In this document: in pieces, positions 33,113 to 63,697 of the stretch
Layout of the letters: each line of letters starts with the position of its first letter
How positions within the stretch are numbered: the first letter of the stretch is position 1
Translations under genes and position numbers: made by a program
Virus record (IMG/VR): IMGVR_UViG_3300033997_000092
Location: 1 to 64,000 of that record
Strand: one strand, 5' to 3'
DNA length: 64,000 nt
The notes under the pieces: model-generated
Database searches by the model: none
What the model saw: only the letters and a program-made list of their open reading frames with translations
What the model was told of the DNA's origin: nothing

Positions 33113-33952
33113 CTACTTGATTTTCACAATCTTGAAGATGTGCTTAGGCAAAAGTTGAATCTTATCAACAATAGATTCCTCTTCTACCAAAGTACCAGGC
33201 TCATATGAGTAAGAGTCCCCTCCAGGCAGCGCACCAAGTTCAGCCAACTTAATCAAATCGGAGTTCTTTTGCACGAACGTATGGATATCAAGCATTACCT
33301 TTTGGTCGGTCAGTTGGAATATAATTCCATAACTTGAGCCATCTATACGATCAAGGCTAGTCCCAGCTCGCCCAGTGGCATATATACGGGCTTTCTTCGG
33401 ATTAAGAGTCCAGCTCGTTGGATTTGTCAACGTGAGTCCGTTACGTTTAATCTCCTTGAGTTGATCCGCAGAGACCCGCATACCACGATACAATACAGGA
33501 ACTTTATCGGCATAAGGCTTGAGTAAATTGCCGTACCGTAGAATCTTCTGCAACGCTTCTTGGTTGTTTGGAGTTGTTGTCCAGCTCATTATATCAACGA
33601 GAAGACGCGCACGTACTTTGATAGATTTATCGCTAAGTAGTGGTTTGATTGCCGTTAACTCTTTGGTTATGTTTACAAACTTTCTGGGTGTAAAAGGCAG
33701 ATTAGCTTTCTTCCAACTACCCAAAACATTAGCGTTGTGGTTAAACACACCATCAGGCATAACACGCAACATAACGTAAGGCAGCTTCTCTACCGAAATA
33801 TGGTAAAAGTGTTTCGATCCTAAATTACGCTTTGACACGGAAGGCTTGAAACCGGCAGCTTTAATCGCATCAGTAATTAAACTCAACGCCGTAAGCATGT
33901 CTTGGTCTGACAGTCCTTTTTTAGGTTCATCTAACGATAGTTGAATTTTCAT
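33113..33952 (-). CDS. putative ADP-ribosyltransferase (R-S-E clade)
   Basis: VLYRGM, PTSWT and LVEEESIV appear in canonical order. Confidence 0.68.
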   Translation of the reverse strand: MKIQLSLDEPKKGLSDQDMLTALSLITDAIKAAGFKPSVSKRNLGSKHFYHISVEKLPYVMLRVMPDGVFNHNANVLGSWKKANLPFTPRKFVNITKELTAIKPLLSDKSIKVRARLLVDIMSWTTTPNNQEALQKILRYGNLLKPYADKVPVLYRGMRVSADQLKEIKRNGLTLTNPTSWTLNPKKARIYATGRAGTSLDRIDGSSYGIIFQLTDQKVMLDIHTFVQKNSDLIKLAELGALPGGDSYSYEPGTLVEEESIVDKIQLLPKHIFKIVKIK

Positions 33953-33955
33953 ACA

Positions 33956-35605
33956 CTACTCCGTATCTTTAGAAGCTTTATCTATGGCTGTCTGGATAGC
34001 ATTGTTAGGGCGCACACCCAGCTCACGGAAAAACTCTTTCAACAGGCCCGGATCGATATAGTTTTGGATTGCTGTTGTAGCAGTCACTTTATCACCGTTC
34101 ATATGTCCCAGCTTCTCACCTACCTTCTTCAATGCTTCCAATACCCATTTGTTTACAGCAGCATCGGTTGCATTGCGCCCTTTACCAAATGGGTGCTTGG
34201 CAAGGATTTCCTTAGTAAGGATTGTACCACGTGCATGGCGGAAGTTGTGGGCAGTGACTCCATCAGGAGCACCAATACGCTTCAGGTAGTCGTTGACTTT
34301 TGAACCAGTAACACGGCTTTGACGAGGACCATACGTCATTAAAAAGTCGCCGCTATTTTTCCCATCAGCTAGTTGTCGGAGCAAACCACGCAACAGACCA
34401 GTTATGTGCGTATTGGAAGGTATAGTGTGTTTTTGTGCAATACCTTTCTTGCCAATATACTTCAATGTGAAGCTATTTGCCGCCTTATCCAAGAACTCTT
34501 TCACTTTCAGGCTACTAATACCTGTAGCGCCAGTTGCACTACCTATACGGCCTGACGTTATATAGATGGTTTCTATGATAACAGCGCATACTGTGTCCAG
34601 TGAGTTTATATCACCAGACAGATCACGGCGCCAGCGTTTTTGTAGTTTCGGAAGGCTATCAATCAGTTCTTTAACAGTGTCGAATTTGCCCACTGTCGCA
34701 GACTTCTTATAGTTGATAGTGTAGATGCGTTGGGGCTGACCATTACCAAACAAAGGATAATGGAGGAAGACATAAGTGTCGTCTTTAACTGGGTCATATT
34801 TCGTATTCAACTCTATTCGGCCTGTAACAGCACCGTTGATTTTAACTTTAGCAGAAGTGTACAATGCGCCTGCTTCATCCAGATACCCGTCAAACATAGG
34901 CAGCTTATGTTTTATGTTCAACTTAGCCATGTGTCTGTGGACGTCTTTCAAATGGACAAGCTTTGCGCCTGAACCACGCACTAACCGCAATATTTCGGAT
35001 TTGACTACAGCACCTATATCACGATTAAGTTTCAGGAACTGTTTGTATACTTCGGCATTTTTAGCACGTAAGGCTTCTTTCTGTTCGACAGTAACGCTGT
35101 CAGAATTCACACCAAAATGCTTCTTAGAAAAGACCTGCAAGTCTTTAATTAGGGCACTCTGGTCATTTGTTTCAGTGTGATTGAACATACCACTCAGTGT
35201 AGTGTCTCCAAGCAATGACACGTTTTTGGTCATTTGTTTCTTGGCAGTTTCACTGTCCCGAAGCACGATAGATACAAAGTTATTGATAAGGCCGAGTTGA
35301 GCTTTACTCAAATCAGTTTCTTTTTCAAGTAAAGCACGTTTGGCTTTCAGTGCCTCAGCCAGATCAATGATGTCTTCTGTATCTTCACCTTTCAATGTAT
35401 CAGCAAGTACACGGGCCAAAATAGGCTTCCGTAACTTGAACCGCTCCATGAATTCGTCAGTTTGTTTGTGCCAAGTAACGGCATCTTTCATTGCTTGTTT
35501 GTCCATCTGCCTTTCAAACACATGGACAGCTATAAACAAAGTGATTAGCTTTAAGAAGCTGTGGGCTGTAGTAGAAGATACAGCCGATTGTGATAAAAGA
35601 GTCAT
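33956..35605 (-). CDS. type IB DNA topoisomerase-like tyrosine transesterase
   Basis: SGRIG (R), YIGKKG (K), HNFRH (R), KLGH (H) and AIQNYIDP (Y). Confidence 0.82.
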   Translation of the reverse strand: MTLLSQSAVSSTTAHSFLKLITLFIAVHVFERQMDKQAMKDAVTWHKQTDEFMERFKLRKPILARVLADTLKGEDTEDIIDLAEALKAKRALLEKETDLSKAQLGLINNFVSIVLRDSETAKKQMTKNVSLLGDTTLSGMFNHTETNDQSALIKDLQVFSKKHFGVNSDSVTVEQKEALRAKNAEVYKQFLKLNRDIGAVVKSEILRLVRGSGAKLVHLKDVHRHMAKLNIKHKLPMFDGYLDEAGALYTSAKVKINGAVTGRIELNTKYDPVKDDTYVFLHYPLFGNGQPQRIYTINYKKSATVGKFDTVKELIDSLPKLQKRWRRDLSGDINSLDTVCAVIIETIYITSGRIGSATGATGISSLKVKEFLDKAANSFTLKYIGKKGIAQKHTIPSNTHITGLLRGLLRQLADGKNSGDFLMTYGPRQSRVTGSKVNDYLKRIGAPDGVTAHNFRHARGTILTKEILAKHPFGKGRNATDAAVNKWVLEALKKVGEKLGHMNGDKVTATTAIQNYIDPGLLKEFFRELGVRPNNAIQTAIDKASKDTE

Positions 35606-36393
35606 TCAAAAATCTCCTTCATAGAATCCGCGAATATTTTTATTTCTGGCGAATCCAATTTTAATCCTTCTTCCAGTAAAAAGTTGCTATAGATGTCAGG
35701 TAGCCCTTGTATAGCTGCTTTACTTGCAGCAACAAATGCCGCAGCAGTTACAGTTCCATTGACATCGTATTCTACGGCTTTCACTGCTTCCTCTAAGAAG
35801 ACAGTATCCATATCCCAAGATTTCAACACTGCCCTTGTAAGTGTCTTTACAAGGTTCGGATTGATCATGCTCAAATCTAAGTCATCAATACCGTTAGCAT
35901 CAGCTTCAGCAATAATAGGCAAATAACCTATGTTGCTTATCATGCCATGTAACATCAGATCATCCGAGCTACATGCGTTGGGAAAGCGTGAATGGTAATG
36001 CAGTGAAAGTGCCATACAGGCAACATCACACGATTCTTTGTATAGGTTACGTATCAATGTTTTATTCTTGCCGTGACGACCAACAAAGACTTGTTCCAAT
36101 GCAATAGCACTGACAATGTTTTTAATCCGACCAATGCCAATACGGATAACGGCTGCCTTCAGGTCTGTAATACGAACAGGAGAAGATAGAAGGGCACTAT
36201 TCGATATTTTCAAGATGCGTAATGACATCGACGGGTCTTGAATCAGTATATTTGCTATCTGGTGTGCTGTAGCCAGTTCATTGTCGAATGCCCGTAGCAC
36301 TTTAATAGCAATCTCAGGAAGCGTAGGCAACACTAAATAGCCTGTGGATAGTTTACTTCGCACAGTAGATGCAAGCATACTTAGTTTAGACAT
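35602..36393 (-). CDS. HDOD-domain protein
   Basis: LPTLPEIAIKV, QDPSMSLRILKISNS, LKAAVIRIG and ISNIG (degenerate HD); ATG at 36393 after GGAG. Confidence 0.85.
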   Translation of the reverse strand: MSKLSMLASTVRSKLSTGYLVLPTLPEIAIKVLRAFDNELATAHQIANILIQDPSMSLRILKISNSALLSSPVRITDLKAAVIRIGIGRIKNIVSAIALEQVFVGRHGKNKTLIRNLYKESCDVACMALSLHYHSRFPNACSSDDLMLHGMISNIGYLPIIAEADANGIDDLDLSMINPNLVKTLTRAVLKSWDMDTVFLEEAVKAVEYDVNGTVTAAAFVAASKAAIQGLPDIYSNFLLEEGLKLDSPEIKIFADSMKEIFE

Positions 36394-36411
36394 ATGAAAC
36401 TCCATACAAGA

Positions 36412-36440
36412 TAAAGAAAAGGGAGCACTTTGGCTCCCTT
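36412..36440 (-). terminator. intrinsic terminator
   Basis: On the minus strand: AAGGGAGC-CAAAGT-GCTCCCTT followed by TTCTTTA. Confidence 0.8.
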
Positions 36441-36451: not shown

Positions 36452-39046
36452 TTAAATTATCTTGCGTCCGCCGCCATAGATCCAAAGATCAGAAACAACT
36501 TCTTTATCTTTGTTACCACCACGAACTTGACGCACTGTTAAAGTACCGTCATGGATATTGTAATCGACTACTTCAACAGTCAACCACACTTTACCCTTTT
36601 TGATACTGTAGACAGGTGCATTCATAATAAGCGCATCGCTGGTCAGTGCCTCTGTCAGAGCATTAGCTAATTTGGCTTGGCGATCAATCAGAGTACCAAG
36701 TTTAACAGCGTCAGGAGAACCTGGAGAGGCACCCTGTGCTTTAGCTGTGGCATCTTTGATTTGCTGTGTCAAGCGATTCAGTTCTTCAACTGAGGCTTTA
36801 ACATCGCCAATCTTATCCATGTTCTGTACCATAGTGTGAATCAGACGACTACGTTCAATAGCCTTAGGCTCACGTTCTGGTAATATCAGACCAAGAATAA
36901 CCAATGTATATTCTTTACCTTCACTAATACGCTCTGTTACTTTACCGCGGAAGAAGTTACCATATGCACGGCGAATACGGTCGATTGTATTCTTAGCTTC
37001 TTGTACGAAAAGTGGGCTGTTGTTAGGAGCTGCCAGCACAATACGTGGAGGATTGTTGATAACAACATGCTCAGCACCAGCAGGCAACAATTTACTATCT
37101 TTGATATAGTAGGGCTTAAACTCAGCAGAGAAGAAACCTTCGTTGATTGCTTTAGCTAATTCCAACAACACAGATGTTTCGTTACCTGTATAGATTGGTT
37201 GCTTCAGCTTGTACCCAGTAGCAGGCTGCTTAGGACGAACAGTGAATTTCTCCATTGCTTGCGTAAGCATTACTGACTTGGCCTGGTTCTTGTTGGCAAT
37301 ACTATCACCAACAGCTTTAGCCAGAACTGGATATTGTTGCTTCTGGGAATTAACTACTAATGAGTCGTTGCCTTTCAGCACGAATGTTTTGTACATTGGA
37401 ACAGCAGTTGATTTTTTACGTACCAGCTCTGCTTTAACCAATACATCAAGTTCTTTCTGCGTTGTAGCCAAAAGTACACTGTATTCATCGACGAATGCTG
37501 ATGTCTGAACAAGTCCAACATGGACAGGAGAAGTTTTACCGAAGATTTGAAGCTTCTTAACTTCTTTTGCTTTCTGTCGTAAATCTTTATTGGAATCTTT
37601 TACAGTACCGAAACGCTTGGTTTCAACAGCCTCGCGTAGCTCCTGTTGTTTAGGAGACTCAGGTACCTTACGTTTTGTTTCTGCCTTAACTGCAATAGAC
37701 AGTTCTTTAGCAGGTGATGTTACCTTGATGCCTGCAGGTACTTTGCCTTTGTAAGGAACACAAGACTTCAGTAGCAGGTCAAGTTCACGTTCTGTCAGCT
37801 TGAATTCTACCTTTGGTTCTTGTAAGTCAATTACATACATTACGTTGCGTATGCCACGGCGGTAACCAAACACTTCATTGGCTTCTAAGCTCATTTCATA
37901 TTTGGCATGGTGATTACGCAAATGCTTTGCACGACCGTTAGCTGGCTTGTAACGTACTACAGTGTATTCTTTATCAGCAGCAGACTGAGACACTATGACG
38001 TTGTGTTGGCGATGTTCACCGGTACGTGGACCGCCACGATTGAAATTGGCAGCAGGTTTGCGTGTTACCAAATGCTGCTTATGCTCACCGCTACGAACTC
38101 CGTACGGATAACCTGACACGTTTGCAAAGTGCGATGTCTTAGTTTGGGTAGACTCTGACTCAGGAACAGGAGAAGGCTTATCACCTTCATTTGAAGCAGG
38201 TACAGTCGCTTCTAAACAAAGTTCATGTTCAACGCCTTCAGCAACTACGTCATTACATTTGTTGTCTGATATTGTACCAAACCGAGTAGATAAATCCTTT
38301 ATCTCAGTTGTGATACGAGGCGTATTGCCATATATCTCAGATACTGGAACATTCACAGGACCATCGGTACCACAATGTTTTGCAATGACAGCATCTACAA
38401 CGTGTTTGATTTTCTCAATTTCCATAGCGTTACACAACAGGAACATTGCTTTCTTCAAACGCATTGTATCACGCATAGATACCATGCTGTTCATACGGCT
38501 GTATTCTTCTGCATCCGATTCGGTCAAAGCAGACATAAAGCCTTCGAAGCCCCAGCACAGCCACAGACCCAATTTGTAACTGAAACCAAAAGAACATACT
38601 GTGTGGATAGGCTGTCCTGTTTCACGGTCGTGTACTACGCGTGGAGCGCGTACATCTAAATCATGGAGAATCTGAGCAACAGGGTAGCGTCCAATCAACT
38701 GACCAAACGAGTTGCAGAAAATCAATTCTTCTGCAGGCAAGCCTTGATCTACTACACAAGATGATACACCAACTCGCCAGTTAAAATCTGGACCGCACAC
38801 TTTAGATGCTAACTCAGTTCCGGGTAAACTATCACACTCTGGCTCAGATGGCTTAACTATGATAGCGGCTGTTGACTCAAGTTCATTTGCCTGTAGCCGC
38901 TGTGTTTTGCCGAATAACGGCATAGGTTTACCATTACCGAAACTGATAGTGCCGTTCCCATAATCAGCACTGATAGATATATGCAGATCGTCTTGGGCTA
39001 AGTGTAACCAAACTCTATCAGTCTGGGGAATCATAGATTTGTCCAT
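36452..39046 (-). CDS. large multi-domain putative virion/internal protein
   Basis: 864 aa in the late block; shares a domain with 54240..54929. Confidence 0.7.
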   Translation of the reverse strand: MDKSMIPQTDRVWLHLAQDDLHISISADYGNGTISFGNGKPMPLFGKTQRLQANELESTAAIIVKPSEPECDSLPGTELASKVCGPDFNWRVGVSSCVVDQGLPAEELIFCNSFGQLIGRYPVAQILHDLDVRAPRVVHDRETGQPIHTVCSFGFSYKLGLWLCWGFEGFMSALTESDAEEYSRMNSMVSMRDTMRLKKAMFLLCNAMEIEKIKHVVDAVIAKHCGTDGPVNVPVSEIYGNTPRITTEIKDLSTRFGTISDNKCNDVVAEGVEHELCLEATVPASNEGDKPSPVPESESTQTKTSHFANVSGYPYGVRSGEHKQHLVTRKPAANFNRGGPRTGEHRQHNVIVSQSAADKEYTVVRYKPANGRAKHLRNHHAKYEMSLEANEVFGYRRGIRNVMYVIDLQEPKVEFKLTERELDLLLKSCVPYKGKVPAGIKVTSPAKELSIAVKAETKRKVPESPKQQELREAVETKRFGTVKDSNKDLRQKAKEVKKLQIFGKTSPVHVGLVQTSAFVDEYSVLLATTQKELDVLVKAELVRKKSTAVPMYKTFVLKGNDSLVVNSQKQQYPVLAKAVGDSIANKNQAKSVMLTQAMEKFTVRPKQPATGYKLKQPIYTGNETSVLLELAKAINEGFFSAEFKPYYIKDSKLLPAGAEHVVINNPPRIVLAAPNNSPLFVQEAKNTIDRIRRAYGNFFRGKVTERISEGKEYTLVILGLILPEREPKAIERSRLIHTMVQNMDKIGDVKASVEELNRLTQQIKDATAKAQGASPGSPDAVKLGTLIDRQAKLANALTEALTSDALIMNAPVYSIKKGKVWLTVEVVDYNIHDGTLTVRQVRGGNKDKEVVSDLWIYGGGRKII

Positions 39047-39687: not shown

Positions 39688-40181
39688 AATGAAATCCTCT
39701 CAATAAACAAAGAGCAACCTTCTGGCAATAAATTTATAGTTCCAGGAGAATTCAACCTGCGTACTCCAATTTGGACATAATCGCCTTTGTTGAGAACTAC
39801 ATTAGGTAAAGCAAACTCTAATGTCTGTGTTCCTTGATTACCCAACTGATAAGCGTTACCGTACGAAACACTTCTGGCCAGTCCTTCACCATTAACAGCA
39901 ATAAACACTTGCACTATATCACCTGCACGGGCAGCGTTAGCTCCTCCTGTGCTATATCCTTCTATAGATACAGTACACCTGTACTTGATGCTGTATGTAG
40001 ATCTTTCAGTTACACGGATTCTATCTTTCTCTGTGCCCTGACTATACAATCTAACATCATACCCTTGAACAAGTGTTATAGGAATTGCTACTGCCTGTGA
40101 CGAACTAAGTGTAAGTCCCGACGGAGATACTGCTAAGGCAGATTGTGCTTTTTGTTGGACCAACTGGCCATTCATATTCAT
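39684..40181 (-). CDS. beta-rich putative virion protein (fibre-tip/C1q-like)
   Basis: Alternating beta-strand pattern, for example VLNKGDYVQIGVR. Confidence 0.5.
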   Translation of the reverse strand: MNMNGQLVQQKAQSALAVSPSGLTLSSSQAVAIPITLVQGYDVRLYSQGTEKDRIRVTERSTYSIKYRCTVSIEGYSTGGANAARAGDIVQVFIAVNGEGLARSVSYGNAYQLGNQGTQTLEFALPNVVLNKGDYVQIGVRRLNSPGTINLLPEGCSLFIERISL

Positions 40182-40747
40182 TATTCAATCCACACTAAGG
40201 AAGCGTCAAATTCCACTACCCGTGTTGGCATGTTGTGTTCATCAAACATGGCTACCTTAGCTCTAGTGCCTGCCCAATTCAAACCTACCATAATTCCTTG
40301 TTGTTCACGATTTGGTCCTACCAATACGGGAGTGTTCATCGCACGATGTTCACGGGAATACGTGATGTTCTTCACGTTTATGTTCAGCATCTTCTTGCCT
40401 TCAAAGGCTTTTACTTGGTCTGCTACAAACTTACGGCAAGTAACAACCAAGTCTTCTTTAAGTCTGCGTATGTCAGCATTCATAAAGAAGGTCATACATG
40501 CTTCCCTTACATCCTTATATGGGTAACTCACAAGCGGAGTTTTAGGTGCTTTGTTTTCAACCATGAAAGCATCTTTACCAAGTTTGATAAGCTTGGTTTG
40601 CACGTTGGTCATTTTGTTTGTCCACGTCAGTGAATAAACATTACCAATCTTATCAAACTTGACTTCTATTTGTACAGGGCCGTATGTTTCTCGCCGAAGT
40701 GCTGCACTGGCTGTGGCAGCCAAACTGATGAATACAAGCATTGTCAA
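40181..40747 (-). CDS. hypothetical putative virion protein
   Basis: 188 aa; N-terminal FISLAA motif. Confidence 0.7.
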   Translation of the reverse strand: MTMLVFISLAATASAALRRETYGPVQIEVKFDKIGNVYSLTWTNKMTNVQTKLIKLGKDAFMVENKAPKTPLVSYPYKDVREACMTFFMNADIRRLKEDLVVTCRKFVADQVKAFEGKKMLNINVKNITYSREHRAMNTPVLVGPNREQQGIMVGLNWAGTRAKVAMFDEHNMPTRVVEFDASLVWIE

Positions 40748-42707: not shown

Positions 42708-43664
42708 TTACGAGGAGATCGAATCTATCAGATCTCCTACTTTAAAAATGCCCAGAACACGAAGCGACATTGGGTTCTTCAAAACGATGCCTTGAGATTT
42801 AATATCAATCAGTGAGGCATACAGGAACTTAGTGTTCTGGTCTATTGTTATTGGTCTTAAAAGTTCTTCATCGTCATCACGGTCAAAAACTTTCTTGTTT
42901 GTTTGATCTAAGATAATGCTGTGGACTGTGTAGTCCTCATTTGGAGAACCAAGTATGCAAATCTTAAATTGTCTCAGTATGGGGTCCTTACGTTTGAATT
43001 CATCGTACAGGAACTTAGCTGAGTGGCCGTGACATAAACCAACATTACCCATCGATTTGTATATGTTGGAAATATCATAGCCTCCTCTTTGTTTCAAAGC
43101 ACCGAGCAGTATCTTGGTAGCAAAGAACACCGGAGGTTTGTTTAAATCTGAAGCAACTGCTTTAAGTGATTTTGCTCCGCCATTTTCACGAACCAAATTC
43201 TTTAGATCTTGGTAGGTATAGCGTGTTACCAAACGGACACGTACAAGCTTTTCAGCAGCTTTGTATGTGTATGCAGGTTGAAGCAATTTATCTTTACGCA
43301 GGTAACGGCCTTCATTTGACCGTATGTGCTGGGCTGGGTCCATAACAACCACAAGTCCCTCACTGACAATACAGTGGAAGCGTCCACCGTTATCAGTGTA
43401 GATATTAAGCATCAGATTCTTTGGATTATCTTGCATTGCTATGTGGAGAAAAGAAGCCACAGGTGCATACGCAAACAAACCTGAACTGTTTAAAGCACTA
43501 CGGAAGAATTCATTACCACGTGCGTTGCTGCGGTAGTAGGGCATGTCTTTCAAAGCCCTTTTGCTATCGATAGCTCCGAACAGATTTCTGGCTATCTTGG
43601 CGGCCTCGTCATAGTCACGACTACACGAAATGAATCGCCGCTTTAGTTTAACCTTGATTTTCAT
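42708..43664 (-). CDS. hypothetical protein with a possible C-terminal papain/transglutaminase-like domain
   Basis: GLCHGHS...VHSIILD gives a Cys-His-Asp pattern. Confidence 0.55.
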   Translation of the reverse strand: MKIKVKLKRRFISCSRDYDEAAKIARNLFGAIDSKRALKDMPYYRSNARGNEFFRSALNSSGLFAYAPVASFLHIAMQDNPKNLMLNIYTDNGGRFHCIVSEGLVVVMDPAQHIRSNEGRYLRKDKLLQPAYTYKAAEKLVRVRLVTRYTYQDLKNLVRENGGAKSLKAVASDLNKPPVFFATKILLGALKQRGGYDISNIYKSMGNVGLCHGHSAKFLYDEFKRKDPILRQFKICILGSPNEDYTVHSIILDQTNKKVFDRDDDEELLRPITIDQNTKFLYASLIDIKSQGIVLKNPMSLRVLGIFKVGDLIDSISS

Positions 43665-54239: not shown

Positions 54240-54929
54240 TTATAATATCACGGACATCAGATGGTAAAGCTTGCCATCAATACGAGCAGAGCCAAATTCT
54301 ACATCAACTGTTCTATCCAGTTTTTCAACAGCGCGTTCACTGTCGTCTTCCCACTTACCGTAAGCTAATGGCTGGAGCCCTTTCTTGTCTTGATATTGAC
54401 GCAGTACAGGTTCAGCATCATAGTAATAGTAGACTTCCCCAGGAAGCATTTCTTGGGCGAACAAAAACTTAATCTTGTTCATACCAGGAACTTTGATTTT
54501 TTGCAGCTTAGCAGTAACCAATTTGTCTTCGCGTATTTGCGATTTGAACGGGCTAGTTCCTGTAGGAGCAGCCGCTTTTGGTTGAGCGTCAGGCTTGCTT
54601 ACTTTAACGAGTGTGTCGAGTTGTTCAGGGCCAGGCAACACAGGTCTGCCATTTACCTTACCTTTATAAGGCTTTGACGCATCCAGTAGACGTTTAAGCA
54701 CTTTAGGCTCAAACTTAAACTGTATAGATACATCACTTTCGTGGACAACTACAACTTTTGATTTAGTTGCCAGTACACCAAATCTGTCATTCTGATCGAA
54801 GTCAAGATCATACGCACGGTGGACGTTCTTGAACATCAGAGGCTTTTTACCTGTGTACTTGTACCACTTGTAATCTGCTTCTGTTTTCTTAGAGGCAGAT
54901 AGAGATAACATCAGGAGCTTTATACTCAT
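54240..54929 (-). CDS. putative virion/internal protein
   Basis: N-terminal LSLSA motif; domain shared with 36452..39046. Confidence 0.72.
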   Translation of the reverse strand: MSIKLLMLSLSASKKTEADYKWYKYTGKKPLMFKNVHRAYDLDFDQNDRFGVLATKSKVVVVHESDVSIQFKFEPKVLKRLLDASKPYKGKVNGRPVLPGPEQLDTLVKVSKPDAQPKAAAPTGTSPFKSQIREDKLVTAKLQKIKVPGMNKIKFLFAQEMLPGEVYYYYDAEPVLRQYQDKKGLQPLAYGKWEDDSERAVEKLDRTVDVEFGSARIDGKLYHLMSVIL

Positions 54930-55240
54930 CCTTTACCTGCCTTTTGAATGTTTACAATGGTTTGAATACGGCGTACAAGGTTGTTGTACTCCATTTTAAG
55001 GCGCATGGCCTCTGCACGTTTCTTAGCGTGTTTCACAGGGTCACCGCGACGCAGATGAATACTATCCAGCCTAGAGATTATCTTGGCACGAATATTCTTC
55101 AAACGCTTACGGAGTTGCTGTAGCTGAGTACGTGTTAAGTGTTTGCGTCTTGGACCAAAACGGCGCTTACGAGGACCACGATAGATATAAGGCTTTGTCG
55201 TGTTTACGTCTGCATAAGAAACCGATACTGATATAAGCAT
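54926..55240 (-). CDS. very basic small protein, possibly DNA-binding/internal
   Basis: ATG at 55240 after GGAG; ISVSVS N-terminus; Arg/Lys-rich. Confidence 0.7.
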   Translation of the reverse strand: MLISVSVSYADVNTTKPYIYRGPRKRRFGPRRKHLTRTQLQQLRKRLKNIRAKIISRLDSIHLRRGDPVKHAKKRAEAMRLKMEYNNLVRRIQTIVNIQKAGKG

Positions 55241-55249
55241 AATACACTC

Positions 55250-55277
55250 CAGAAACAAAGAAGGGGCCGTAGCCCCT
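55250..55277 (-). terminator. intrinsic terminator after the tail tube gene
   Basis: On the minus strand: AGGGGC-TACG-GCCCCT followed by TCTTTGTTT. Confidence 0.78.
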
Positions 55278-55285
55278 GTCTTTTA

Positions 55286-55840
55286 TTATGCACCAGCAAT
55301 AATACCAGCAGGGCGCGCCATTGGGTTTTGAACGCGGGTGTAGTCATCGAACGCGAACTCTACGTTACAAGGCAAAGCTGTAGCCATACCGTCGAACGTA
55401 AGGTCTTGTACTGCTTTAACCCAGAAGCCGTGAATTTCATATGACTCTTTGGTAGCACCTTTAGCATCAAAGATGTTTAAGGTTGCAGTAACGGCGTATT
55501 CAGATTTGAACAAGCCACGTTGTTCTTCTGTAGTACGTTCAATGTTTGCCCAGTCTTCACAGATTTTGTGAATACGCATGTCAGCGTTTTCCACGAACTC
55601 AGCACTGATAGTACCAGAGAAAGTTTTACGGCCTGCATAACGCAGCGTGTGACCGTGAGCTTCCTGTAATACTTCTTCAATTGTCTGACCGGGTTTGATG
55701 AACGTCTTACATTGCAGACGGAACGCACGGCCACCGTCTGAAGGAAGTCCTGGCGGCAATGCTGGGATAACTAACTCAAAGCTATCTGACAGCAAAGGAT
55801 CGCCTACGGACTTAAATTCACTTAATGTTACCTTAGCCAT
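55286..55840 (-). CDS. tail tube protein (gp19-like)
   Basis: Directly downstream of the sheath; RYAGRKTFSGTISAEFVE pattern. Confidence 0.85.
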   Translation of the reverse strand: MAKVTLSEFKSVGDPLLSDSFELVIPALPPGLPSDGGRAFRLQCKTFIKPGQTIEEVLQEAHGHTLRYAGRKTFSGTISAEFVENADMRIHKICEDWANIERTTEEQRGLFKSEYAVTATLNIFDAKGATKESYEIHGFWVKAVQDLTFDGMATALPCNVEFAFDDYTRVQNPMARPAGIIAGA

Positions 55841-59058: not shown

Positions 59059-60156
59059 TTAACGCTTGGCTTTTGCTACTGAGCGTGGGTTGGCCAGAAC
59101 GAAAGACATGATTTCGTTCAGTAACCAGCCCTTAGTAGTTTCACCCTGATTCTCGCCAGAAGTCGGACGAGAAGTGATACCACCACGCACGTTCATTACA
59201 CCGTGGTTCTCACGGTCAGAAACAACATAGATGTCACCACGATCCAGAACACGTTGGTTCTCAGGACGGTAACCGTCTGTCATCAGTTCCAGGCCGTACA
59301 GTGTACCAACTTTACCAGTCATTACCAGTTCATACTGGGCAACTGGAGTCAGAGCATCAGCCCACTGAGGTTCAGCGATGATGTCTTCCCAGAAGTTGTT
59401 GGCGATCAGAGCTTTAGTAGCCGGCAGGTTCCAGTCAGTAACCTGAGTACGCAGTGCACCGATAACAGCAGGAGTTAAACGGCCTGAAATCAGAGTGATG
59501 TTGTTAGCAACACCGACAGTCATATCAGCAGCACGTTTCCAAATGCGGTCGCGGCCAGTAACCATTGCTTCCAGAGCTTGACCGTAAGCGTGGTCCAGCA
59601 AATCGTGAGTAGCCTGACCCAGGTCTAACTCAGATACACGGACGTTTGCTTTCAGTTCAAATTCCTGAGGGAAGAAGTAACGGTCTTTGATCAGCTGGTA
59701 ACCCATTTGAGTCGGGCTAGTAGCCACAACAGCTTGAACATCGTGACGAGGCATTGGCACACGTGGCGCTTCACCTTGACGCAGTTCGTTGATCATTACC
59801 AGGCTTGACATGAAGCCTTGACGGGTTTGCTGTTCACGGACGTCTTCAGAAATGGTAGCACCTAAAGATGCCCACAAATCAGCGTCAGCGTGTGCCGCTT
59901 GCAGAATGTCGCGCTTATCAGCGTTTGACATTGAAGCGAAAGTTTTCTGACCTTCGTTAACAGCAACAATTTGACCGCTGGCTAAAGCCATCATCAAAGC
60001 TTGTTGTTGTTGCAACAGGTCTTTAAAACCAGAAGCGTTGATTTCACCAGTTGAGCTGCTAAGGGCTTTCATACCCTGACCAGGCAACACCAGATCCGCT
60101 AAATCGCCGCCGTTGGCCAGACGAAATGTTACACCCTGCTTAGGTAAGTTCTTCAT
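59059..60156 (-). CDS. major capsid protein (HK97 fold)
   Basis: About 365 aa, strongly biased codon use, HK97-like pattern (FELKANVRVS..., GKVGTLYGLELMTD); ATG at 60156. Confidence 0.85.
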   Translation of the reverse strand: MKNLPKQGVTFRLANGGDLADLVLPGQGMKALSSSTGEINASGFKDLLQQQQALMMALASGQIVAVNEGQKTFASMSNADKRDILQAAHADADLWASLGATISEDVREQQTRQGFMSSLVMINELRQGEAPRVPMPRHDVQAVVATSPTQMGYQLIKDRYFFPQEFELKANVRVSELDLGQATHDLLDHAYGQALEAMVTGRDRIWKRAADMTVGVANNITLISGRLTPAVIGALRTQVTDWNLPATKALIANNFWEDIIAEPQWADALTPVAQYELVMTGKVGTLYGLELMTDGYRPENQRVLDRGDIYVVSDRENHGVMNVRGGITSRPTSGENQGETTKGWLLNEIMSFVLANPRSVAKAKR

Positions 60157-60200: not shown

Positions 60201-60893
60201 TTAGGCGCGGATTTCCAGACGTAAGAAAGACGATTCAGCAGACGGGCTGCCTAACACAACTACGTTGGTCAGCAGAGTACCGTTGCCGCCAACTGTGAAC
60301 ATACCGTTCTGGCCCAGTTTCGGGTGAACAACAGAAGTCCAGTCAACAGACGCATCAAACATAGAAGTTTCGATAGTACCACGCTGAACAACACCAGTAG
60401 AACCGAACTCAGCAGAAGCTGTGTTGACACCGCCCAGGTGATCACCAGTGAATTGCTTAGCTTCAGAAGCCAGCAGTTCGTAGTGGTACTGAACAAATAC
60501 TGATTTACCTACGTCAGCGGTATTGAAGAATACGTCTTTACCGTTAACAGTAGCAGTGCCTGCATCACCGGCAGAAGTACCTGCGCTGATAGTTGCTTTA
60601 GTGCCAGCAACTTTAACCAGCAACTGGCCAGTAACAGGAACGCGGTTCAGACTGATTTTGCCGCCAGTAGGAATTACGTGTTCTTCGACCATAGTCGCAC
60701 GTGAAGGAGGCAGGTTAACGCTCATGTTCAGACCAGCGAAAGTTTCACCTTCAACGCCAGTAGAAGTAGATACGTAGGTCTTACCGTCTTCTTTGACGTA
60801 AACCAGAGCATAACCTTCTTCGTTCAGCGCCAGGCCAGGAAGGATATCGAACGGGTTGGTCTCGAAGAACTGTGATTGCTTGTAGTTCAACAT
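60201..60893 (-). CDS. putative head decoration/structural protein
   Basis: Between scaffold and MCP; beta-rich; highly expressed-type codon bias. Confidence 0.6.
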   Translation of the reverse strand: MLNYKQSQFFETNPFDILPGLALNEEGYALVYVKEDGKTYVSTSTGVEGETFAGLNMSVNLPPSRATMVEEHVIPTGGKISLNRVPVTGQLLVKVAGTKATISAGTSAGDAGTATVNGKDVFFNTADVGKSVFVQYHYELLASEAKQFTGDHLGGVNTASAEFGSTGVVQRGTIETSMFDASVDWTSVVHPKLGQNGMFTVGGNGTLLTNVVVLGSPSAESSFLRLEIRA

Positions 60894-60958
60894 AACTGTT
60901 TTCTCCAGAATTATTTAAGCTAAGTATCTAAGCACCGTGTGCCTTGAAACTTAATGAC

Positions 60959-63061
60959 TTAGTTTTTGCGTGCCGCGGCAGCCAATAAATTACCCCAACC
61001 GGTACCAGCCTTGCCTTTAGCACTCGCAACAGCTTCTAACTGTTGTGGTTCTTGCTGGACAGACTGTTGCTGATTGGATTTCTTCACATCCCAGTCACTC
61101 AGACGTTGTTCAACATCCTTGTGGCCGGCTGCCTGATAGGAAGCTTGCGCTACCATATCGGCGTATGAGTTCTGTACTTCAAGCGGCTGAGACAACAAGT
61201 TCATAGCTGCTTCAACAACCATCTGGCTGGCTTGGTCGCCAGTGTCCTGGAAGGCTGTGTGTACAATCTGCTCTGCATTACCAACACCAGCAGCACTTAA
61301 CGCCGCAATCAAACGATTAATCGTTGGGTTAGTTTTGCCTTTAAACACACCACGGTTGATACCCATGCTGGCAGTAGCCAATGCAGCCATCAAACGAGTT
61401 TTAGTTTCTTCACGCTCAGCGTCTACCTGTTGCAGAGTTTCCTGAACACGGGCTTCGGCTTTAGCCATGATTGCATGTTCAACAACTGCTTGAACATCGA
61501 TATCTGGATTGATACGGGCGAAGCCGTAATCAGTCAGAGCCTGTTCAATACCATCAGCGTTAGCAGTAGCAATAACTGCGTCACGGAAAGTAGGAGTTGA
61601 GAAGATGCGTTTCAGTTCAGCATTACCGTCGACGGCAGAGGCAGTAGCTACTGCAACTGGAGTACGGTCATAGAATGCTGTCCAGGTGATTTCGCCACCG
61701 ATTACACCACAGTTCGCAACAGCAAACAGCTTAGCATCGAGGTTACCGCCAGTAGAAGCTGCTATTGCAGTCAACATATCAACGTCCAGTTCATCAACAG
61801 GTTCACCTGTATGAGTACCAGCAGATGATTCAGATTCCAACTCACCGTCTTCATCTTCATCGCCTGTATAGGCATCGTCATCCAAGTCTTCATCCAGGTC
61901 TTCATCGTCAGATGATTCAGATTCCAGTTCGCCGTCTTCGTCTTCGTCGTCGGCATCCAGATCGTCTAAGTCGAGGTCAAGATCGAGGTCTTCGTCTTCA
62001 TCAGACTCCTCTTCTTCCTCGTCTTCGTCTTCTTCATCACCGTCAGAAGCCTGAGCTTCTAAACGTGCCAATTCGGCATCAAGATCAAAGTCGTCTTCGT
62101 CGGATGATTCAGATTCCAACTCACCGTCTTCATCTTCGTCTTCATCCAACTCCAGGCCTTCGAGGTCTTCATCATCACCATCGAGATCCAGGTCAGCGTC
62201 TTCGTCGTCACCGTCTTCATCATCAGATGAAACTGAGAAAAGTTCTTCCAGTTTATCCATTTCAGCAGACAGAGAATGTAAGCAACCTGAGTCCTGTGGA
62301 TCTAACAGGCCGCCGCCACATGAAGGACATACAGTCACATCAGAACTGGTACTTACGATAACATTACCGCAAGTGTCTGAATGAGAACATAAGTACAGGT
62401 GGGCTTCAACTTGTTTACCATCAGAGGCTTCTGCTTGGAACGGAGTCTCTGACTCAACTTGTTCCAGGTCGTCCATACCTTCAACTGGGTCAACATTAAA
62501 ATGTACCGAGTTGTGGCTAATGAAAGTACCGCTCTCTGAGGTCAGAGTAACAGTGTCTTCACCGCGACAGGCAGCAGCAAAAGAGTCACGCGCTTCTTCA
62601 GCAGTAGGAGCAGCTACGATTACGATTGGCTGGTCGGTAGTACCGGCACCAGTTTCACCTTCATCAGAGCTGAGTGCTTCAATTTCAGAATCGCTTAATT
62701 CAGGGATTTGGGTGCTGCACTGTGGACAATATTCTAAGTCAGAAGACTCAGAAAGTAAGTGGGCACCGCAACCATCAGCACAGATGGTGTAATTAACTGT
62801 CACTTTGTCACCAACAGAGGCTAATGCTTGGAACGGCATATTACCTGTGTAAGGGGTCAAGTCATTCTGACCTGTAAGCGGGTTGTACGGCTCTGTAGCA
62901 GAGGCGTGTGTCACGAAAGTGCGTTTATCGCTGTCTTGAAAAACAGCTACACTACCTTCCTGTGCATACGCTACTGCGGCAAACAGGGCCTGCGCTTCAT
63001 GTTTAGAACGACCAGCGACAACGATACCAGAGTTACCTGGTTCCTTTTTACGCTTGATCAT
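60959..63061 (-). CDS. putative prohead scaffold/core protein with two Zn-ribbon modules and a long acidic tract
   Basis: First gene of the head operon; about 140-aa D/E tract; coiled-coil C-terminal half. Confidence 0.6.
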   Translation of the reverse strand: MIKRKKEPGNSGIVVAGRSKHEAQALFAAVAYAQEGSVAVFQDSDKRTFVTHASATEPYNPLTGQNDLTPYTGNMPFQALASVGDKVTVNYTICADGCGAHLLSESSDLEYCPQCSTQIPELSDSEIEALSSDEGETGAGTTDQPIVIVAAPTAEEARDSFAAACRGEDTVTLTSESGTFISHNSVHFNVDPVEGMDDLEQVESETPFQAEASDGKQVEAHLYLCSHSDTCGNVIVSTSSDVTVCPSCGGGLLDPQDSGCLHSLSAEMDKLEELFSVSSDDEDGDDEDADLDLDGDDEDLEGLELDEDEDEDGELESESSDEDDFDLDAELARLEAQASDGDEEDEDEEEEESDEDEDLDLDLDLDDLDADDEDEDGELESESSDDEDLDEDLDDDAYTGDEDEDGELESESSAGTHTGEPVDELDVDMLTAIAASTGGNLDAKLFAVANCGVIGGEITWTAFYDRTPVAVATASAVDGNAELKRIFSTPTFRDAVIATANADGIEQALTDYGFARINPDIDVQAVVEHAIMAKAEARVQETLQQVDAEREETKTRLMAALATASMGINRGVFKGKTNPTINRLIAALSAAGVGNAEQIVHTAFQDTGDQASQMVVEAAMNLLSQPLEVQNSYADMVAQASYQAAGHKDVEQRLSDWDVKKSNQQQSVQQEPQQLEAVASAKGKAGTGWGNLLAAAARKN
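61824..62137 (-). repeat. three intragenic repeats encoding EDEDGELESESS
   Basis: Copies start at 61824, 61911 and 62103; the first and third are identical over 35 bp. Confidence 0.85.
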
Positions 63062-63151
63062 CGGTTTCTCCTTTCGGATTGTTTAGAACACCACACAGAG
63101 TCTTCTGATTCTGCATATATTAAAATTAAGTTTCGCAGAAAAATATCTACG

Positions 63152-63203
63152 AAAATACCGGTATTTTTAGCAAATAATTTACCGGTATTTTTCAGCGAAT
63201 TTT
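63152..63203. repeat. palindromic tandem repeat (TACCGGTA core, 24-bp period)
   Basis: Perfect palindrome AAAATACCGGTATTTT at 63152-63167; TACCGGTATTTTT occurs at 63156 and 63180. Confidence 0.8.
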
Positions 63204-63226
63204 CGAGACATTACAGCGTAAAATCA

Positions 63227-63697
63227 TCAGTAAGTTTCGATTGATTTGTAGAATTTTTCAAGTCCTTTTAGATTAGGAGAATATCCATGATCTCCGACCA
63301 TCTTGAAGAACTCTGCATTTTTCAAATCCTTCAAAGGATTGTTTTCGCGTAGCTCACCTTTGGGATGAATATAATCAGCGACGAACGTATCCCAATCGAC
63401 ACCATACGACCGCATTTCTTGAGCAAATATAAAGAACTTTTGCCATTGAGCTTGATCGTCTCCGTTCAGGTCAGTCAACGAATAGTGTTGAATGTCTGAA
63501 TCGGATAGTGGTTTAGGATAAACTACGATGCCGAACCTGTAGCGACTCTCAGGAAGTTTCCTTGTTATCGATTCAGGTATATCAGCAGGAGCTATAAAAC
63601 GTGAGTGACCTTTCGGCTGCGTTCCTAAGCTGAAGGGACGCAAACGCATCCCATACAGGTATTCTTTAGCTTTAGCAATACTGACTAATACGCGCAT
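63227..63697 (-). CDS. DarA C-terminal-like domain protein
   Basis: YLYGMRLRPFSLGTQPKG...FGIVVYPKPLSDSDIQHYSL matches my recollection of the DarA_C pattern. Confidence 0.6.
   Translation of the reverse strand: MRVLVSIAKAKEYLYGMRLRPFSLGTQPKGHSRFIAPADIPESITRKLPESRYRFGIVVYPKPLSDSDIQHYSLTDLNGDDQAQWQKFFIFAQEMRSYGVDWDTFVADYIHPKGELRENNPLKDLKNAEFFKMVGDHGYSPNLKGLEKFYKSIETY

What the first reader, a model, noticed from the sequence alone, without database searches (positions are those of the whole stretch)
33113..63697. Shared N-terminal hydrophobic-S-x-S/A motif on unrelated late proteins: candidate capsid-cargo or prohead-protease signal
Seen: at least nine unrelated late-strand proteins carry a similar motif near the N-terminus. 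These are MLSLSA (54240), LISVSVS (54926), VFISLAA (40181), VLVSIAK (63227, DarA_C-like), LLSQSA (33956, TopIB), LHISISA (36452), RFISCS (42708) and IQLSLD (33113, ART), plus QISISM internally in 58713. Related sites recur in the scaffold (FQALAS, FQAEAS, LHSLSA, LESESS x3, LEAVAS), near the MCP N-terminus (KALSS) and at an internal domain border of the 864-aa protein (VIVSQSAA). The + strand accessory genes do not obviously start this way. Established: T4 gp21 and phiKZ gp175 cleave internal head proteins at short motifs, and T4 has a capsid-targeting sequence. Inference: this phage tags a set of enzymes (topoisomerase, ART, DarA-like, possible protease, basic DNA binder) for packaging or maturation and injection, using a Ser/Ala-based motif rather than a Glu-based one.
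Basis: partly seen in the sequence, partly recalled or inferred. Interest (0 to 1): 0.8.

Follow-up and report, generated by a model that had tools for sequence, protein, structure and literature searches.

The report
Shared head-targeting leader on phage cargo
A jumbo phage puts the same short N-terminal peptide (about M-K-I-x-V-F-V-S-x-S|A) on many unrelated proteins, and the same Ser/Ala motif recurs in its capsid protein, acidic core protein and head protease, so it is most likely an address-and-cut tag for loading enzymes into the phage head.

Summary
The window is the first 64 kb of a 261-kb jumbo myovirus of the PaBG/Lu11/NCTB group.

- **Enrichment:** hydrophobic-hydrophobic-S-x-[S/A] occurs in the first 20 residues of 8 of 37 late-strand proteins and 0 of 50 early-strand proteins (about 1-1.6 expected).
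- **Peptide-level signal:** Ser codons are mixed.
- **Conservation:** orthologues in seven related phages keep the motif while the flanks diverge.
- **Modularity:** just past the window end, tandem genes share only the leader MKIKVFVSES[A/S].
- **Other substrates:** the motif recurs 16 times (1.2 expected) in the acidic protein upstream of the capsid gene, at two conserved capsid-protein positions, before every KMPT-N domain, and at the end of the variable N-terminal extension of the putative head protease in 48 homologues.

That last result gives the register Phi-x-[S/A]-x-[S/A]|.

Best explanation: a T4-like capsid-targeting and propeptide system with a new Ser/Ala specificity and a divergent, Pfam-less protease. 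Published PaBG data show virion-protein processing, but no sites are mapped. Cleavage and packaging remain unproven. I rate it a new variant of a known kind.

The parts
63674..63697 (-). Leader MRVLVSIA|K of the DarA_C-like 156-aa protein (gene 63227-63697)
   Evidence: The NCTB orthologue starts MLISIS|LGKK.
63697..63927 (-). 3' part of the first of four tandem cargo-type genes (251 aa, contig 63697-64452). Its leader MKIKVFVSES|A lies just outside the window.
   Evidence: The tandem genes share only the leader.
60959..63061 (-). 700-aa acidic (pI 4.1) core or scaffold-like protein with two Zn-ribbon modules and 16 copies of Phi-x-[SA]-x-[SA]-[SA] (FQALAS, FQAEAS, LESESS x3, LEAQAS, LEAVAS, LHSLSA and others)
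   Evidence: 16 observed against 1.2 in composition-preserving shuffles. Four orthologues show 8-12 against 1.5-1.9. A PSSM built from protease N-termini gives 6 hits against 0.7 expected.
60058..60075 (-). MCP candidate site 1, GMKALS|S (aa 33-38), just before the conserved GEINA
   Evidence: Conserved in 5 aligned MCPs. Recovered by the independent PSSM.
59980..59997 (-). MCP candidate site 2, LMMALA|SG (aa 59-64)
   Evidence: Conserved in 5 MCPs. Its position fits the ~20% mass loss of the PaBG MCP on maturation (PMC7412058).
58797..58814 (-). Conserved internal site ELESLA|S (aa 68-73) in the 100-aa acidic protein downstream of the MCP gene
Evidence: Orthologue alignment.
55223..55240 (-). 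Leader MLISVS|VSYAD of a very basic protein (pI 11.9) of about 104 aa. The probable start is the ATG at 55240.
   Evidence: GGAG lies 7 nt upstream of the internal ATG. The NCTB orthologue has IPSES|V at the same place. PSSM hit. pI.
54897..54929 (-). Leader MSIKLLMLSLS|A directly before the KMPT-N domain of the 229-aa protein
   Evidence: Pfam KMPT-N, E 1.6e-9. Orthologues start MLISLS|A (NCTB), MLLLLSTS|A (Yersinia phage) and MLIVVGLSLS|A (L019).
43620..43664 (-). Leader MKIKVKLKRRFISCS|R of a basic 318-aa protein of unknown function
   Evidence: It has no orthologue in NCTB, where a different tagged gene (MLISIS|LTKS) occupies the equivalent position.
40718..40741 (-). Leader MLVFISLA|A of a basic 186/188-aa protein. 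The probable start is the ATG at 40741.
   Evidence: AAGGA lies 7 nt upstream. The NCTB orthologue has SFVSES|E near its N-terminus.
38969..38986 (-). N-proximal site LHISIS|A (aa 21-26) of the 864-aa protein
37982..37999 (-). Internal site VIVSQS|A (aa 350-355) of the 864-aa protein, directly before its KMPT-N domain
   Evidence: The NCTB 837-aa orthologue has SLLSES|A at aa 347, also directly before KMPT-N.
35585..35605 (-). Leader MTLLSQS|A of the type IB topoisomerase (549 aa)
   Evidence: Pfam Topoisom_I. Orthologues start MLITLS|R (NCTB) and MHTSLS|A (PaBG).
33932..33952 (-). Degenerate leader MKIQLSL|D of a 279-aa protein whose C-terminal half looks like an ADP-ribosyltransferase
   Evidence: Atlas feature scores 0.92 and 0.91 to ART clusters, TM 0.61 on aa 123-278. 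No Pfam or PHROG hit. The motif lacks S/A at P1.

Best explanation
The motif is a modular N-terminal leader. Its consensus over 46 instances in 8 phages is M-K-I-x-V-[F/L]-[I/V]-S-x-S|A, and the predicted cut falls at a median of residue 8-9.

I propose it does two jobs, as the T4 internal-protein capsid-targeting sequence does:
1. Its hydrophobic part directs mostly basic cargo proteins into the assembling prohead, probably onto the acidic 700-aa core protein. The cargo includes type IB topoisomerase, a DarA_C-like protein, KMPT-N proteins, NUDIX, a probable ADP-ribosyltransferase, very basic small proteins and a run of unknowns.
2. Its end is the recognition site Phi-x-[S/A]-x-[S/A]| of the phage's own head-maturation protease.

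The putative protease is a 264-aa protein encoded 5.6 kb beyond the window (contig 69573-70367). The same protease would trim its own N-terminal extension, cut the capsid protein's N-terminal propeptide, and chop the acidic core protein at about 16 sites so that it can leave the head.

Shown here: the motif is real, acts at the peptide level, is conserved and modular, and is shared by cargo, MCP, core protein and protease.

Inferred: cleavage, the exact scissile bond, packaging and injection.
For: (1) Enrichment at late-strand N-termini: 8/37 against 0/50, shuffle p<0.0002. An unbiased pattern scan agrees.
(2) Ser codons mix TCN and AGY, and upstream DNA is not conserved, so selection acts on the peptide.
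(3) Orthologues of TopIB, DarA_C, KMPT-N proteins, NUDIX and the 443-aa protein keep the tag in NCTB, PaBG, Yersinia fHe-Yen9-02 and four metagenomic relatives at only 25-45% overall identity.
(4) Tandem genes next to the protease share only the leader; with 14 aa removed, all within-genome BLASTP E-values exceed 0.3. The locus content differs between phages.
(5) The acidic protein has 16 sites against 1.2 expected, replicated in four orthologues.
(6) The MCP has two conserved sites, and the PaBG MCP loses ~20% of its mass. PaBG virion proteins are processed, and gp83, encoded beside the acidic protein, is virion-associated (PMC7412058).
(7) In 48 protease homologues the variable 5-24-aa N-terminal extension ends with P5 hydrophobic 40/48, P3 S/A 44/48 and P1 S/A 42/48, directly before the conserved FD. 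Residues 1-18 of the model are disordered.
(8) A matrix built only from those protease N-termini scores late N-termini above early ones (Mann-Whitney p=0.005, or 0.0006 with the upstream 15 kb). The core rule is met by 24/52 against 5/50 proteins (Fisher p=4e-5).
(9) Protease identity: phrog_18299 'head maturation protease', E 1e-86. The AF2 model (pLDDT 85.8) matches predicted prohead serine protease, COG3740 and XkdF structures at E 1e-7 to 1e-4. His131 and Ser188 are invariant.
(10) 15/17 tagged proteins are basic, with median pI 9.7 against 6.9 for all window proteins; the core protein has pI 4.1.
(11) An internal copy precedes the KMPT-N domain in the 864-aa protein and its NCTB orthologue. 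An internal site argues for cutting, not merely an N-terminal address.
Against: No mass-spectrometric or N-terminal sequence evidence for cleavage at this motif exists for any family member that I could find.

The protease assignment is not supported by Pfam, by PDB sequence or profile searches, by Foldseek against the PDB (best E 0.78), or by hhalign against T4 gp21 or HK97 gp4.

At a strict threshold the protease-derived PSSM recovers only one cargo leader. Cargo leaders have hydrophobic P4 and P2 where the protease and core-protein sites have polar residues. The two classes may therefore not be recognised identically.

TopIB and the other enzymes were not among the PaBG virion bands I could read (rows 1-12 of 14; Coomassie-level detection only).

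The NCTB genome-wide signal is modest (11/164 against 2/138, p=0.02).
Confidence: 0.7

Rival explanations
1. The motif is only a protease recognition site, that is, a propeptide boundary. The leader carries no targeting information, and cargo enters the prohead through other determinants such as charge complementarity with the acidic core or specific domains like DarA_C and KMPT-N.
For: The same skeleton occurs at internal sites that cannot be addresses: the acidic protein, the MCP and the 864-aa protein. Tagged proteins are basic and the core protein is acidic. In P1, DarB targeting needs more than 9 and at most 30 residues (PMC9024508), and some leaders here are only 5-6 residues long.
Against: Cargo leaders have extra conserved features that the internal sites lack: Lys at residue 2, hydrophobic P6 and P4, and Ala at P1'. 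That suggests a second function beyond recognition by the protease. Four unrelated tandem genes keep an identical 10-residue leader.
Confidence: 0.13
2. The motif is a binding or assembly tag that is not cleaved. For example, it could be a beta-strand that docks onto the core protein, portal or capsid interior, as encapsulin cargo-loading peptides dock onto HK97-fold shells.
For: The leader is short, hydrophobic and strand-like and sits on unrelated proteins. No cleavage data exist.
Against: The motif ends the variable N-terminal extension of the protease in 48 homologues. It is about 10-fold over-represented in an acidic protein in the scaffold position. It flanks a domain border inside a polyprotein-like 864-aa protein. 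PaBG virion proteins are known to be processed.
Confidence: 0.08
3. The leaders are export or membrane signals, such as miniature Sec signal peptides cut by host signal peptidase I. That enzyme also follows a small-residue -3/-1 rule.
For: [S/A]-x-[S/A]| matches the -3/-1 rule (my own knowledge). Several leaders read like n-, h- and c-regions, for example MLVFISLAATASA.
Against: The hydrophobic runs are only 3-5 residues long. The motif is most abundant inside a highly acidic cytoplasmic-type protein and in the MCP and protease. The tagged proteins are DNA enzymes such as TopIB and NUDIX.
Confidence: 0.03
4. The motif is a chance or compositional artefact, or a translation-initiation (nucleotide-level) signal of late genes.
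For: The motif was defined after inspecting the data. Loose versions of it are common: Phi-x-[SA]-x-[SA] is expected in about 7-8 of 37 N-termini by chance.
Against: Shuffle, Fisher and unbiased-scan statistics. Replication in independent genomes. Mixed Ser codons, synonymous variation and non-conserved upstream DNA. Internal copies far from any start codon.
Confidence: 0.02

Closest known systems
T4 internal proteins (IPI-III, Alt) with the capsid-targeting sequence, cleaved by gp21
   Same: A short N-terminal leader of about 10 residues is shared by otherwise unrelated, mostly basic proteins encoded in a variable locus. The leader ends in the prohead protease's cleavage motif. The same motif is used in the MCP and in an acidic scaffold core that is degraded. 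An ADP-ribosyltransferase is among the cargo (T4 Alt). This comparison rests on my own knowledge plus PMC9024508.
   Different: The motif here is Phi-x-[S/A]-x-[S/A]|, not [L/I]-x-E|. The putative protease shows no detectable sequence relation to gp21. The cargo set differs (TopIB, NUDIX, KMPT-N, DarA_C). Packaging is unproven here.
phiKZ / 201phi2-1 / SPN3US propeptide processing (gp175 / gp245; S/A/G-x-E|)
   Same: These are jumbo myoviruses in which many head and ejection proteins and the MCP are trimmed at one short motif with a small residue at P3 (PMC5694885 and PMC10052503, listed; motif from my own knowledge).
   Different: P1 is Glu in those phages and Ser/Ala here. Their propeptides are usually long and their cargo forms paralogue families, whereas here a very short shared leader sits on non-homologous proteins. 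The phage lineage is different (PaBG/Lu11 group).
P1 Dar system (DarA, DarB N-terminal capsid-targeting signal, Pro protease)
   Same: A DarA_C domain protein and PmgG are present. In P1, the N-terminal 30 residues of DarB suffice to target a reporter to the capsid, and both DarA and the MCP are processed (PMC9024508).
   Different: The P1 MCP is cut at E120|S121. The P1 signal is longer than 9 residues and is not reported as a leader shared among unrelated proteins.
Herpesvirus assemblin and HK97-type prohead serine proteases
   Same: The predicted fold resembles predicted prohead serine protease, COG3740 and XkdF models. His and Ser are invariant. The preference for small residues around the scissile bond recalls the assemblin consensus (V/L)-x-A|S (my own knowledge).
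   Different: There is no Pfam, PDB-sequence, PDB-fold or hhalign match. The protein has an invariant Cys3-His cluster that is not, to my knowledge, typical of these proteases.
Encapsulin cargo-loading peptides; the Staphylococcus phage 80alpha leader cut by host Prp
   Same: Short terminal peptides direct, or are removed from, proteins destined for an HK97-fold shell (my own knowledge).
   Different: The sequences, the position (mostly C-terminal in encapsulins) and the enzymes (host Prp) differ. These are functional analogies only.

Membership tests
T4-type capsid-targeting sequence / internal-protein system | A short N-terminal leader shared by otherwise unrelated proteins | tested here: met
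   Tandem genes share only the first ~10 aa; BLASTP E exceeds 0.3 after removing 14 aa. 46 leaders in 8 phages.
T4-type capsid-targeting sequence / internal-protein system | The leader ends in the prohead-protease cleavage motif, which is also used in the MCP and scaffold core | tested here: met
   The same Phi-x-[SA]-x-[SA] skeleton occurs in the MCP (2 conserved sites), the acidic core protein (16 against 1.2 expected) and the protease N-terminus (44/48 at P3, 42/48 at P1). This is sequence inference only.
T4-type capsid-targeting sequence / internal-protein system | The cleavage motif is [L/I]-x-E| | tested here: not met
   P1 is Ser in 40/46 and Ala in 6/46 leaders.
T4-type capsid-targeting sequence / internal-protein system | Tagged proteins are inside the mature head, and the leader suffices for targeting | not testable with these tools
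   Only indirect support: PaBG gp83, encoded beside the acidic protein, is virion-associated, and PaBG virion proteins are processed.
T4 gp21 protease family (Pfam Peptidase_S77) | Sequence homology to gp21 | tested here: not met
   No Pfam hit at E<=0.1. hhalign probability 0.9%.
HK97 gp4 / COG3740 / assemblin-like prohead serine proteases | Shared fold | tested here: inconclusive
   Foldseek against BFVD finds many annotated prohead proteases at E 1e-7 to 1e-4, TM 0.4-0.56. Foldseek against the PDB finds nothing (best E 0.78). hhalign against HK97 gp4 gives probability 0.4%.
HK97 gp4 / COG3740 / assemblin-like prohead serine proteases | Catalytic His and Ser conserved | tested here: inconclusive
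   His131 and Ser188 are invariant in 48 homologues, with D168, H215 and E241 also conserved. Their equivalence to known catalytic residues and their spatial proximity were not tested.
phiKZ-type head processing (S/A/G-x-E|) | Glu at P1 | tested here: not met
Sec signal peptide / signal peptidase I substrate | A hydrophobic core of about 7 or more residues followed by small residues at -3 and -1 | tested here: not met
   The -3/-1 rule is met, but the hydrophobic runs are 3-5 residues and the median cut position is residue 8.5. The motif also abounds inside an acidic protein.
P1 Dar anti-restriction cargo | DarA C-terminal domain | tested here: met
   Pfam DarA_C, E 2.8e-12, on the 63227-63697 product. 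Other Dar components were not sought.

The most novel reading that the evidence does not exclude
A whole clade of jumbo phages (PaBG / Lu11 / NCTB / Erwinia-Dickeya-Yersinia 260-kb phages and many uncultured relatives) uses one portable leader of about 8-10 residues to load a fast-changing toolkit into the capsid for injection. The toolkit includes type IB topoisomerase, NUDIX, an ADP-ribosyltransferase, DarA-like and KMPT-N proteins, and very basic DNA binders. The leader is removed by a previously uncharacterised prohead protease family that probably binds zinc and has an assemblin-like small-residue specificity. If so, the leader alone would predict the injected proteome of any member from its sequence, and it could serve as a protein-delivery tag.
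Probability: 0.5. Interest if true: 0.75.

Novelty: new variant of a known kind. Interest (0 to 1): 0.62.

Why it matters
If correct, this defines the cleavage specificity and the capsid-targeting tag of a large and poorly studied jumbo-phage lineage. The only published statement I found is that PaBG virion proteins are 'subject to proteolytic processing', with no sites mapped.

It turns dozens of 'hypothetical proteins' into predicted head cargo. It predicts that a topoisomerase IB and other DNA or nucleotide enzymes are delivered with the genome, as in poxvirus virions. It assigns a function to a Pfam-less protein family that some records annotate as 'endolysin'. It also offers a very short candidate tag for loading foreign proteins into phage heads.

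All of this can be tested directly by virion N-terminomics on cultivable relatives.

Tried and rejected
- Megablast of the head region against the phage collection found nothing. Only protein-level relatives exist.
- The putative protease gave no hit in Pfam, by PDB sequence or profile search, by Foldseek against the PDB, or by hhalign against T4 gp21 and HK97 gp4. Only PHROGs and the viral predicted-structure library link it to prohead proteases.
- A strict PSSM built from protease N-termini recovered the MCP and acidic-protein sites but only one cargo leader. I therefore do not claim that cargo leaders and internal sites are identical signals.
- A nucleotide-level signal (promoter, RBS or downstream box) is rejected on mixed Ser codons and non-conserved upstream DNA.
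- Paralogy as the reason for shared leaders is rejected.
- The Sec signal peptide reading is rejected on hydrophobic-run length and the internal sites.
- The PHROG and RefSeq 'ATPase' label for the 700-aa protein has no support in Pfam. The Atlas link to scaffold families is only 0.74-0.76, so it is a lead.
- Literature searches for mapped cleavage sites or N-terminal sequencing in PaBG, Lu11, phiRSL1 and the Erwinia, Dickeya and Yersinia relatives found none in the searchable library. The phiRSL1 primary papers are not held.
- I did not fetch the remaining ~180 kb of this contig, so the genome-wide test was done on NCTB instead.

Full report
**What the window is.** The 64-kb window is the first 64 kb of a 261,032-bp IMG/VR contig. 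It has a + strand block of about 50 genes (1-32.4 kb) and a - strand block of 37 genes (32.4-64 kb). The - strand block encodes the MCP, sheath, two tube paralogues, tape measure, baseplate, PmgG and further late-type proteins. The MCP is 45-51% identical to those of NCTB, Lu11, PaBG, HRDY3, Yersinia fHe-Yen9-02 and the ~260-kb Erwinia and Dickeya phages. There is no nucleotide-level relative in the phage collection. The window therefore comes from a new, distant member of the PaBG/Lu11 ('Lupandier') jumbo-myovirus group.

The pattern hydrophobic-hydrophobic-S-x-[S/A] occurs in the first 30 residues of 8/37 late-strand proteins and 0/50 early-strand proteins. Its density is 0.72 per 100 aa at late N-termini against 0.07 in protein interiors. 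Shuffling whole proteins or only their first 30 residues gives 1.0-1.6 expected (p<0.0002).

All eight hits lie in the first 20 residues. Widening the window to 60 residues, to allow for wrongly chosen start codons, adds only one early-strand hit. Because the motif was defined after looking at the data, I also ran an unbiased scan of 3,888 reduced-alphabet patterns. The top pattern for late N-termini is Phi-x-Phi-[S/A]-Phi (7.3-fold, 10 proteins, Bonferroni p=0.002), and nothing related is significant on the early strand. Serines in the motif use TCT, TCA, TCG, TCC, AGT and AGC, so the signal is in the peptide and not in the DNA or RNA.

**Replication in other genomes.** I assembled the whole NCTB genome and used it as an independent test set. 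Orthologues there begin MLISLS|A (KMPT-N protein), MLISIS|L (DarA_C-like) and MLITLS|R (TopIB). Further NCTB proteins begin MKIVSIS|A, MKIISIS|A, MLKLNLLSIS|A, MLISIS|LTKS and MNILISLS|S. Hits number 11/164 on the minus-strand blocks against 2/138 on the plus-strand blocks, and 7 of 13 lie within the 26 kb around the head genes.

The same holds in the other relatives:
- PaBG: TopIB starts MHTSLS|A.
- Yersinia fHe-Yen9-02: MHSLS|A, MEIMISLS|A, MLLLLSTS|A.
- Four metagenomic relatives found through the protease: L015, L017, L018 and L019, with protease identity of 77, 62, 56 and 46%.

Over 46 leaders from 8 phages, the positions my selection pattern did not constrain are also biased. P4 is I/V/L in 37/46, P1' is A/S in 36/46, P6 is hydrophobic in 30/46 and residue 2 is Lys in 21/46. 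The predicted cut is at a median of residue 8.5.

**The strongest instances lie just outside the window.** Loci L001 and L011 extend the contig to 79.5 kb. Directly upstream of the DarA_C-like gene there are four tandem genes beginning MKIKVFVSES[A/S]. The first is the gene whose 3' end is the 76-aa ORF at 63697-63927. Then come MKINVMISES|A and MKVLVSLNSA|A, and further on MLRFVALS|A (KMPT-N), MKLVLNLKTLESTS|A (NUDIX) and MRITLDLVSLS|Q.

With the first 14 residues removed, these proteins show no similarity to one another (all within-genome E>0.3). Their upstream DNA is unrelated, and the leader codons vary synonymously. The tandem genes have no NCTB homologues, and NCTB carries different tagged genes at the same place. 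L017 has about nine tagged genes in a row. This is the architecture of the T4 internal-protein locus: a fast-changing set of cargo genes sharing only a leader.

**The same skeleton in the assembly proteins.** The 700-aa protein upstream of the MCP (pI 4.1, 23% Asp+Glu, two Zn-ribbon modules) carries 16 copies of Phi-x-[SA]-x-[SA]-[SA] against 1.2 in composition-preserving shuffles. Its orthologues carry 12, 11, 12 and 8 against 1.5-1.9 expected (p<=0.0003).

Aligned MCPs show two conserved sites, GMKALS|S just before the conserved GEINA (aa 33-38) and LMMALA|SG (aa 59-64). Every KMPT-N domain in these phages is directly preceded by the motif, including internally in the 864-aa protein (VIVSQS|A, aa 350-355) and its NCTB orthologue (SLLSES|A, aa 347).

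**The protease and the register of the motif.** A 264-aa protein at contig 69573-70367, 5.6 kb beyond the window, belongs to phrog_18299 'head maturation protease' (E 1e-86). It is 46% identical to the protein so annotated in fHe-Yen9-02. It has 86 homologues, none with a Pfam domain. His131, Ser188 and Asp168 are invariant, together with a Cys198/Cys201/Cys213/His215 cluster.

An AlphaFold model from 48 sequences is confident (pLDDT 85.8, pTM 0.84) except for residues 1-18 and the C-terminal tail. Against the viral predicted-structure library it matches, beyond its own family (PaBG, phiRSL1, Bacillus phage G), many proteins annotated as prohead serine protease, COG3740, XkdF or DUF2213 at E 1e-7 to 1e-4 and TM 0.4-0.56.

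Against the PDB it matches nothing, by fold (best E 0.78) or by sequence. hhalign against T4 gp21 and HK97 gp4 is not significant. I therefore call it a probable, divergent prohead protease and not a demonstrated one.

In the 48 homologues the N-terminal extension varies from 5 to 24 residues and in sequence. It nevertheless ends, directly before the conserved FD, with P5 hydrophobic (40/48), P3 Ser/Ala (44/48) and P1 Ser/Ala (42/48). That is the signature of an autoprocessed propeptide, and it gives a register, Phi-x-[S/A]-x-[S/A]|, independently of the cargo proteins.

**A non-circular test, and its limits.** A matrix built only from those protease N-termini, leaving out this phage's own, was scanned at a 0.1% false-positive rate. 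It recovers the MCP site 1 and six sites in the acidic protein (0.7 expected), but only one cargo leader. Cargo leaders have hydrophobic P4 and P2 where the protease and core sites have polar residues.

Without a threshold, late N-termini still score higher than early ones (Mann-Whitney p=0.005, or 0.0006 including the upstream 15 kb). The three-position core rule is met by 24/52 late-strand against 5/50 early-strand proteins (Fisher p=4e-5). I read this as two flavours of one skeleton: plain processing sites, and N-terminal leaders with added hydrophobic features that may carry the targeting information.

**Properties of the tagged proteins.** They include:
- TopIB;
- a DarA_C-like protein and KMPT-N proteins;
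- NUDIX;
- a 279-aa protein whose C-terminal half resembles ADP-ribosyltransferases at lead level only (with no Pfam or PHROG hit);
- a pI 11.9 protein of about 104 aa;
- several proteins of unknown function.

Fifteen of 17 are basic, with median pI 9.7 against 6.9 for all window proteins. This matches the pairing in T4 of basic internal proteins with an acidic scaffold core. From my own knowledge, DarA_C and KMPT-N were described as modules of injected 'polyvalent' phage proteins.

**Published evidence.** For PaBG, 14 virion proteins were identified by MALDI-TOF. The authors state that some virion proteins are proteolytically processed, that the MCP loses about 20% of its mass on maturation, and that gp80 (MCP), gp81 and others appear in several bands. 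gp83, encoded beside the acidic protein and beginning MLIKINLLEAVA|A, is a virion protein (PMC7412058). A 20% loss fits MCP site 2 better than site 1. No sites were mapped and no protease is mentioned.

For P1, the MCP is cut at E120|S121 and the first 30 residues of DarB target a reporter to the capsid (PMC9024508). I found no paper describing this leader or this specificity.

**Conclusion.** The best-supported explanation is a T4-like capsid-targeting and propeptide system with a new Ser/Ala specificity, used by a whole jumbo-phage lineage (confidence about 0.7).
- Shown: a real, peptide-level, conserved, modular motif shared by cargo, MCP, core protein and protease.
- Inferred: cleavage, the exact bond, packaging and injection.

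The rivals are protease site without targeting, uncleaved docking tag, Sec-like signal, and artefact, in decreasing order of likelihood. It does not belong to the T4 or phiKZ systems by motif or by protease sequence, but it works like them. I rate it a new variant of a known kind, with interest 0.62.

Noticed in passing
Contig 69573-70367 (outside the window; L011:9206-10000): The putative head protease family has an invariant Cys198/Cys201/Cys213/His215 cluster that looks like a zinc site, and it has no Pfam model. Its orthologues are annotated 'Phage endolysin' in NCTB (BN7874_230) and 'putative endolysin' in Erwinia phage Yoloswag, which is probably a misannotation.
   Followed up: partly
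window 60959-63061 (-): The acidic 700-aa protein contains two duplicated modules. Each has a motif site (PFQALAS or PFQAEAS) followed by a Cys-rich Zn-ribbon (CxxxC...CxxC near aa 94-115, and a second ending CxxC at aa 245). The PHROG and RefSeq label 'ATPase' has no support.
   Followed up: partly
window 33956-35605 (-): A phage-encoded type IB topoisomerase carries the leader in three phages, so it is predicted to be a virion-packaged enzyme, as in poxviruses.
   Followed up: partly
window 35602-36405 (-): An HDOD-domain protein (Pfam E 3e-25) is encoded in a phage. Its NCTB orthologue sits on the opposite-strand (early-type) block. Its role is unknown.
   Followed up: no
window 55853-57475, 55286-55840 and 53311-53850 (-): There are two tail-tube paralogues in the window. 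NCTB has a second sheath paralogue elsewhere (210039-211679). This fits the duplicated sheath reported for the PaBG group.
   Followed up: no
NCTB 9071-9514 (+), locus L005: An FHA-domain protein on the early-type strand starts MNILISLSS. It is therefore a tagged protein outside the late block, possibly a packaged regulator.
   Followed up: no
window 54926-55258 and 40181-40747 (-): The longest-ORF TTG starts are probably wrong. Internal ATGs at 55240 and 40741 have GGAG or AAGGA 7 nt upstream and put the leader at the very N-terminus.
   Followed up: yes
window 60201-60893 (-): The 230-aa protein between the acidic protein and the MCP (phrog_16710) is the orthologue of PaBG gp81, a virion protein seen in several gel bands. 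It is probably a head accessory or decoration protein, not the protease or scaffold.
   Followed up: partly
window 41610-42242 (-) and contig 74254-74733: MmcB-like nuclease-fold and NUDIX genes sit among the late-strand genes. The NUDIX protein carries the leader in four phages.
   Followed up: partly
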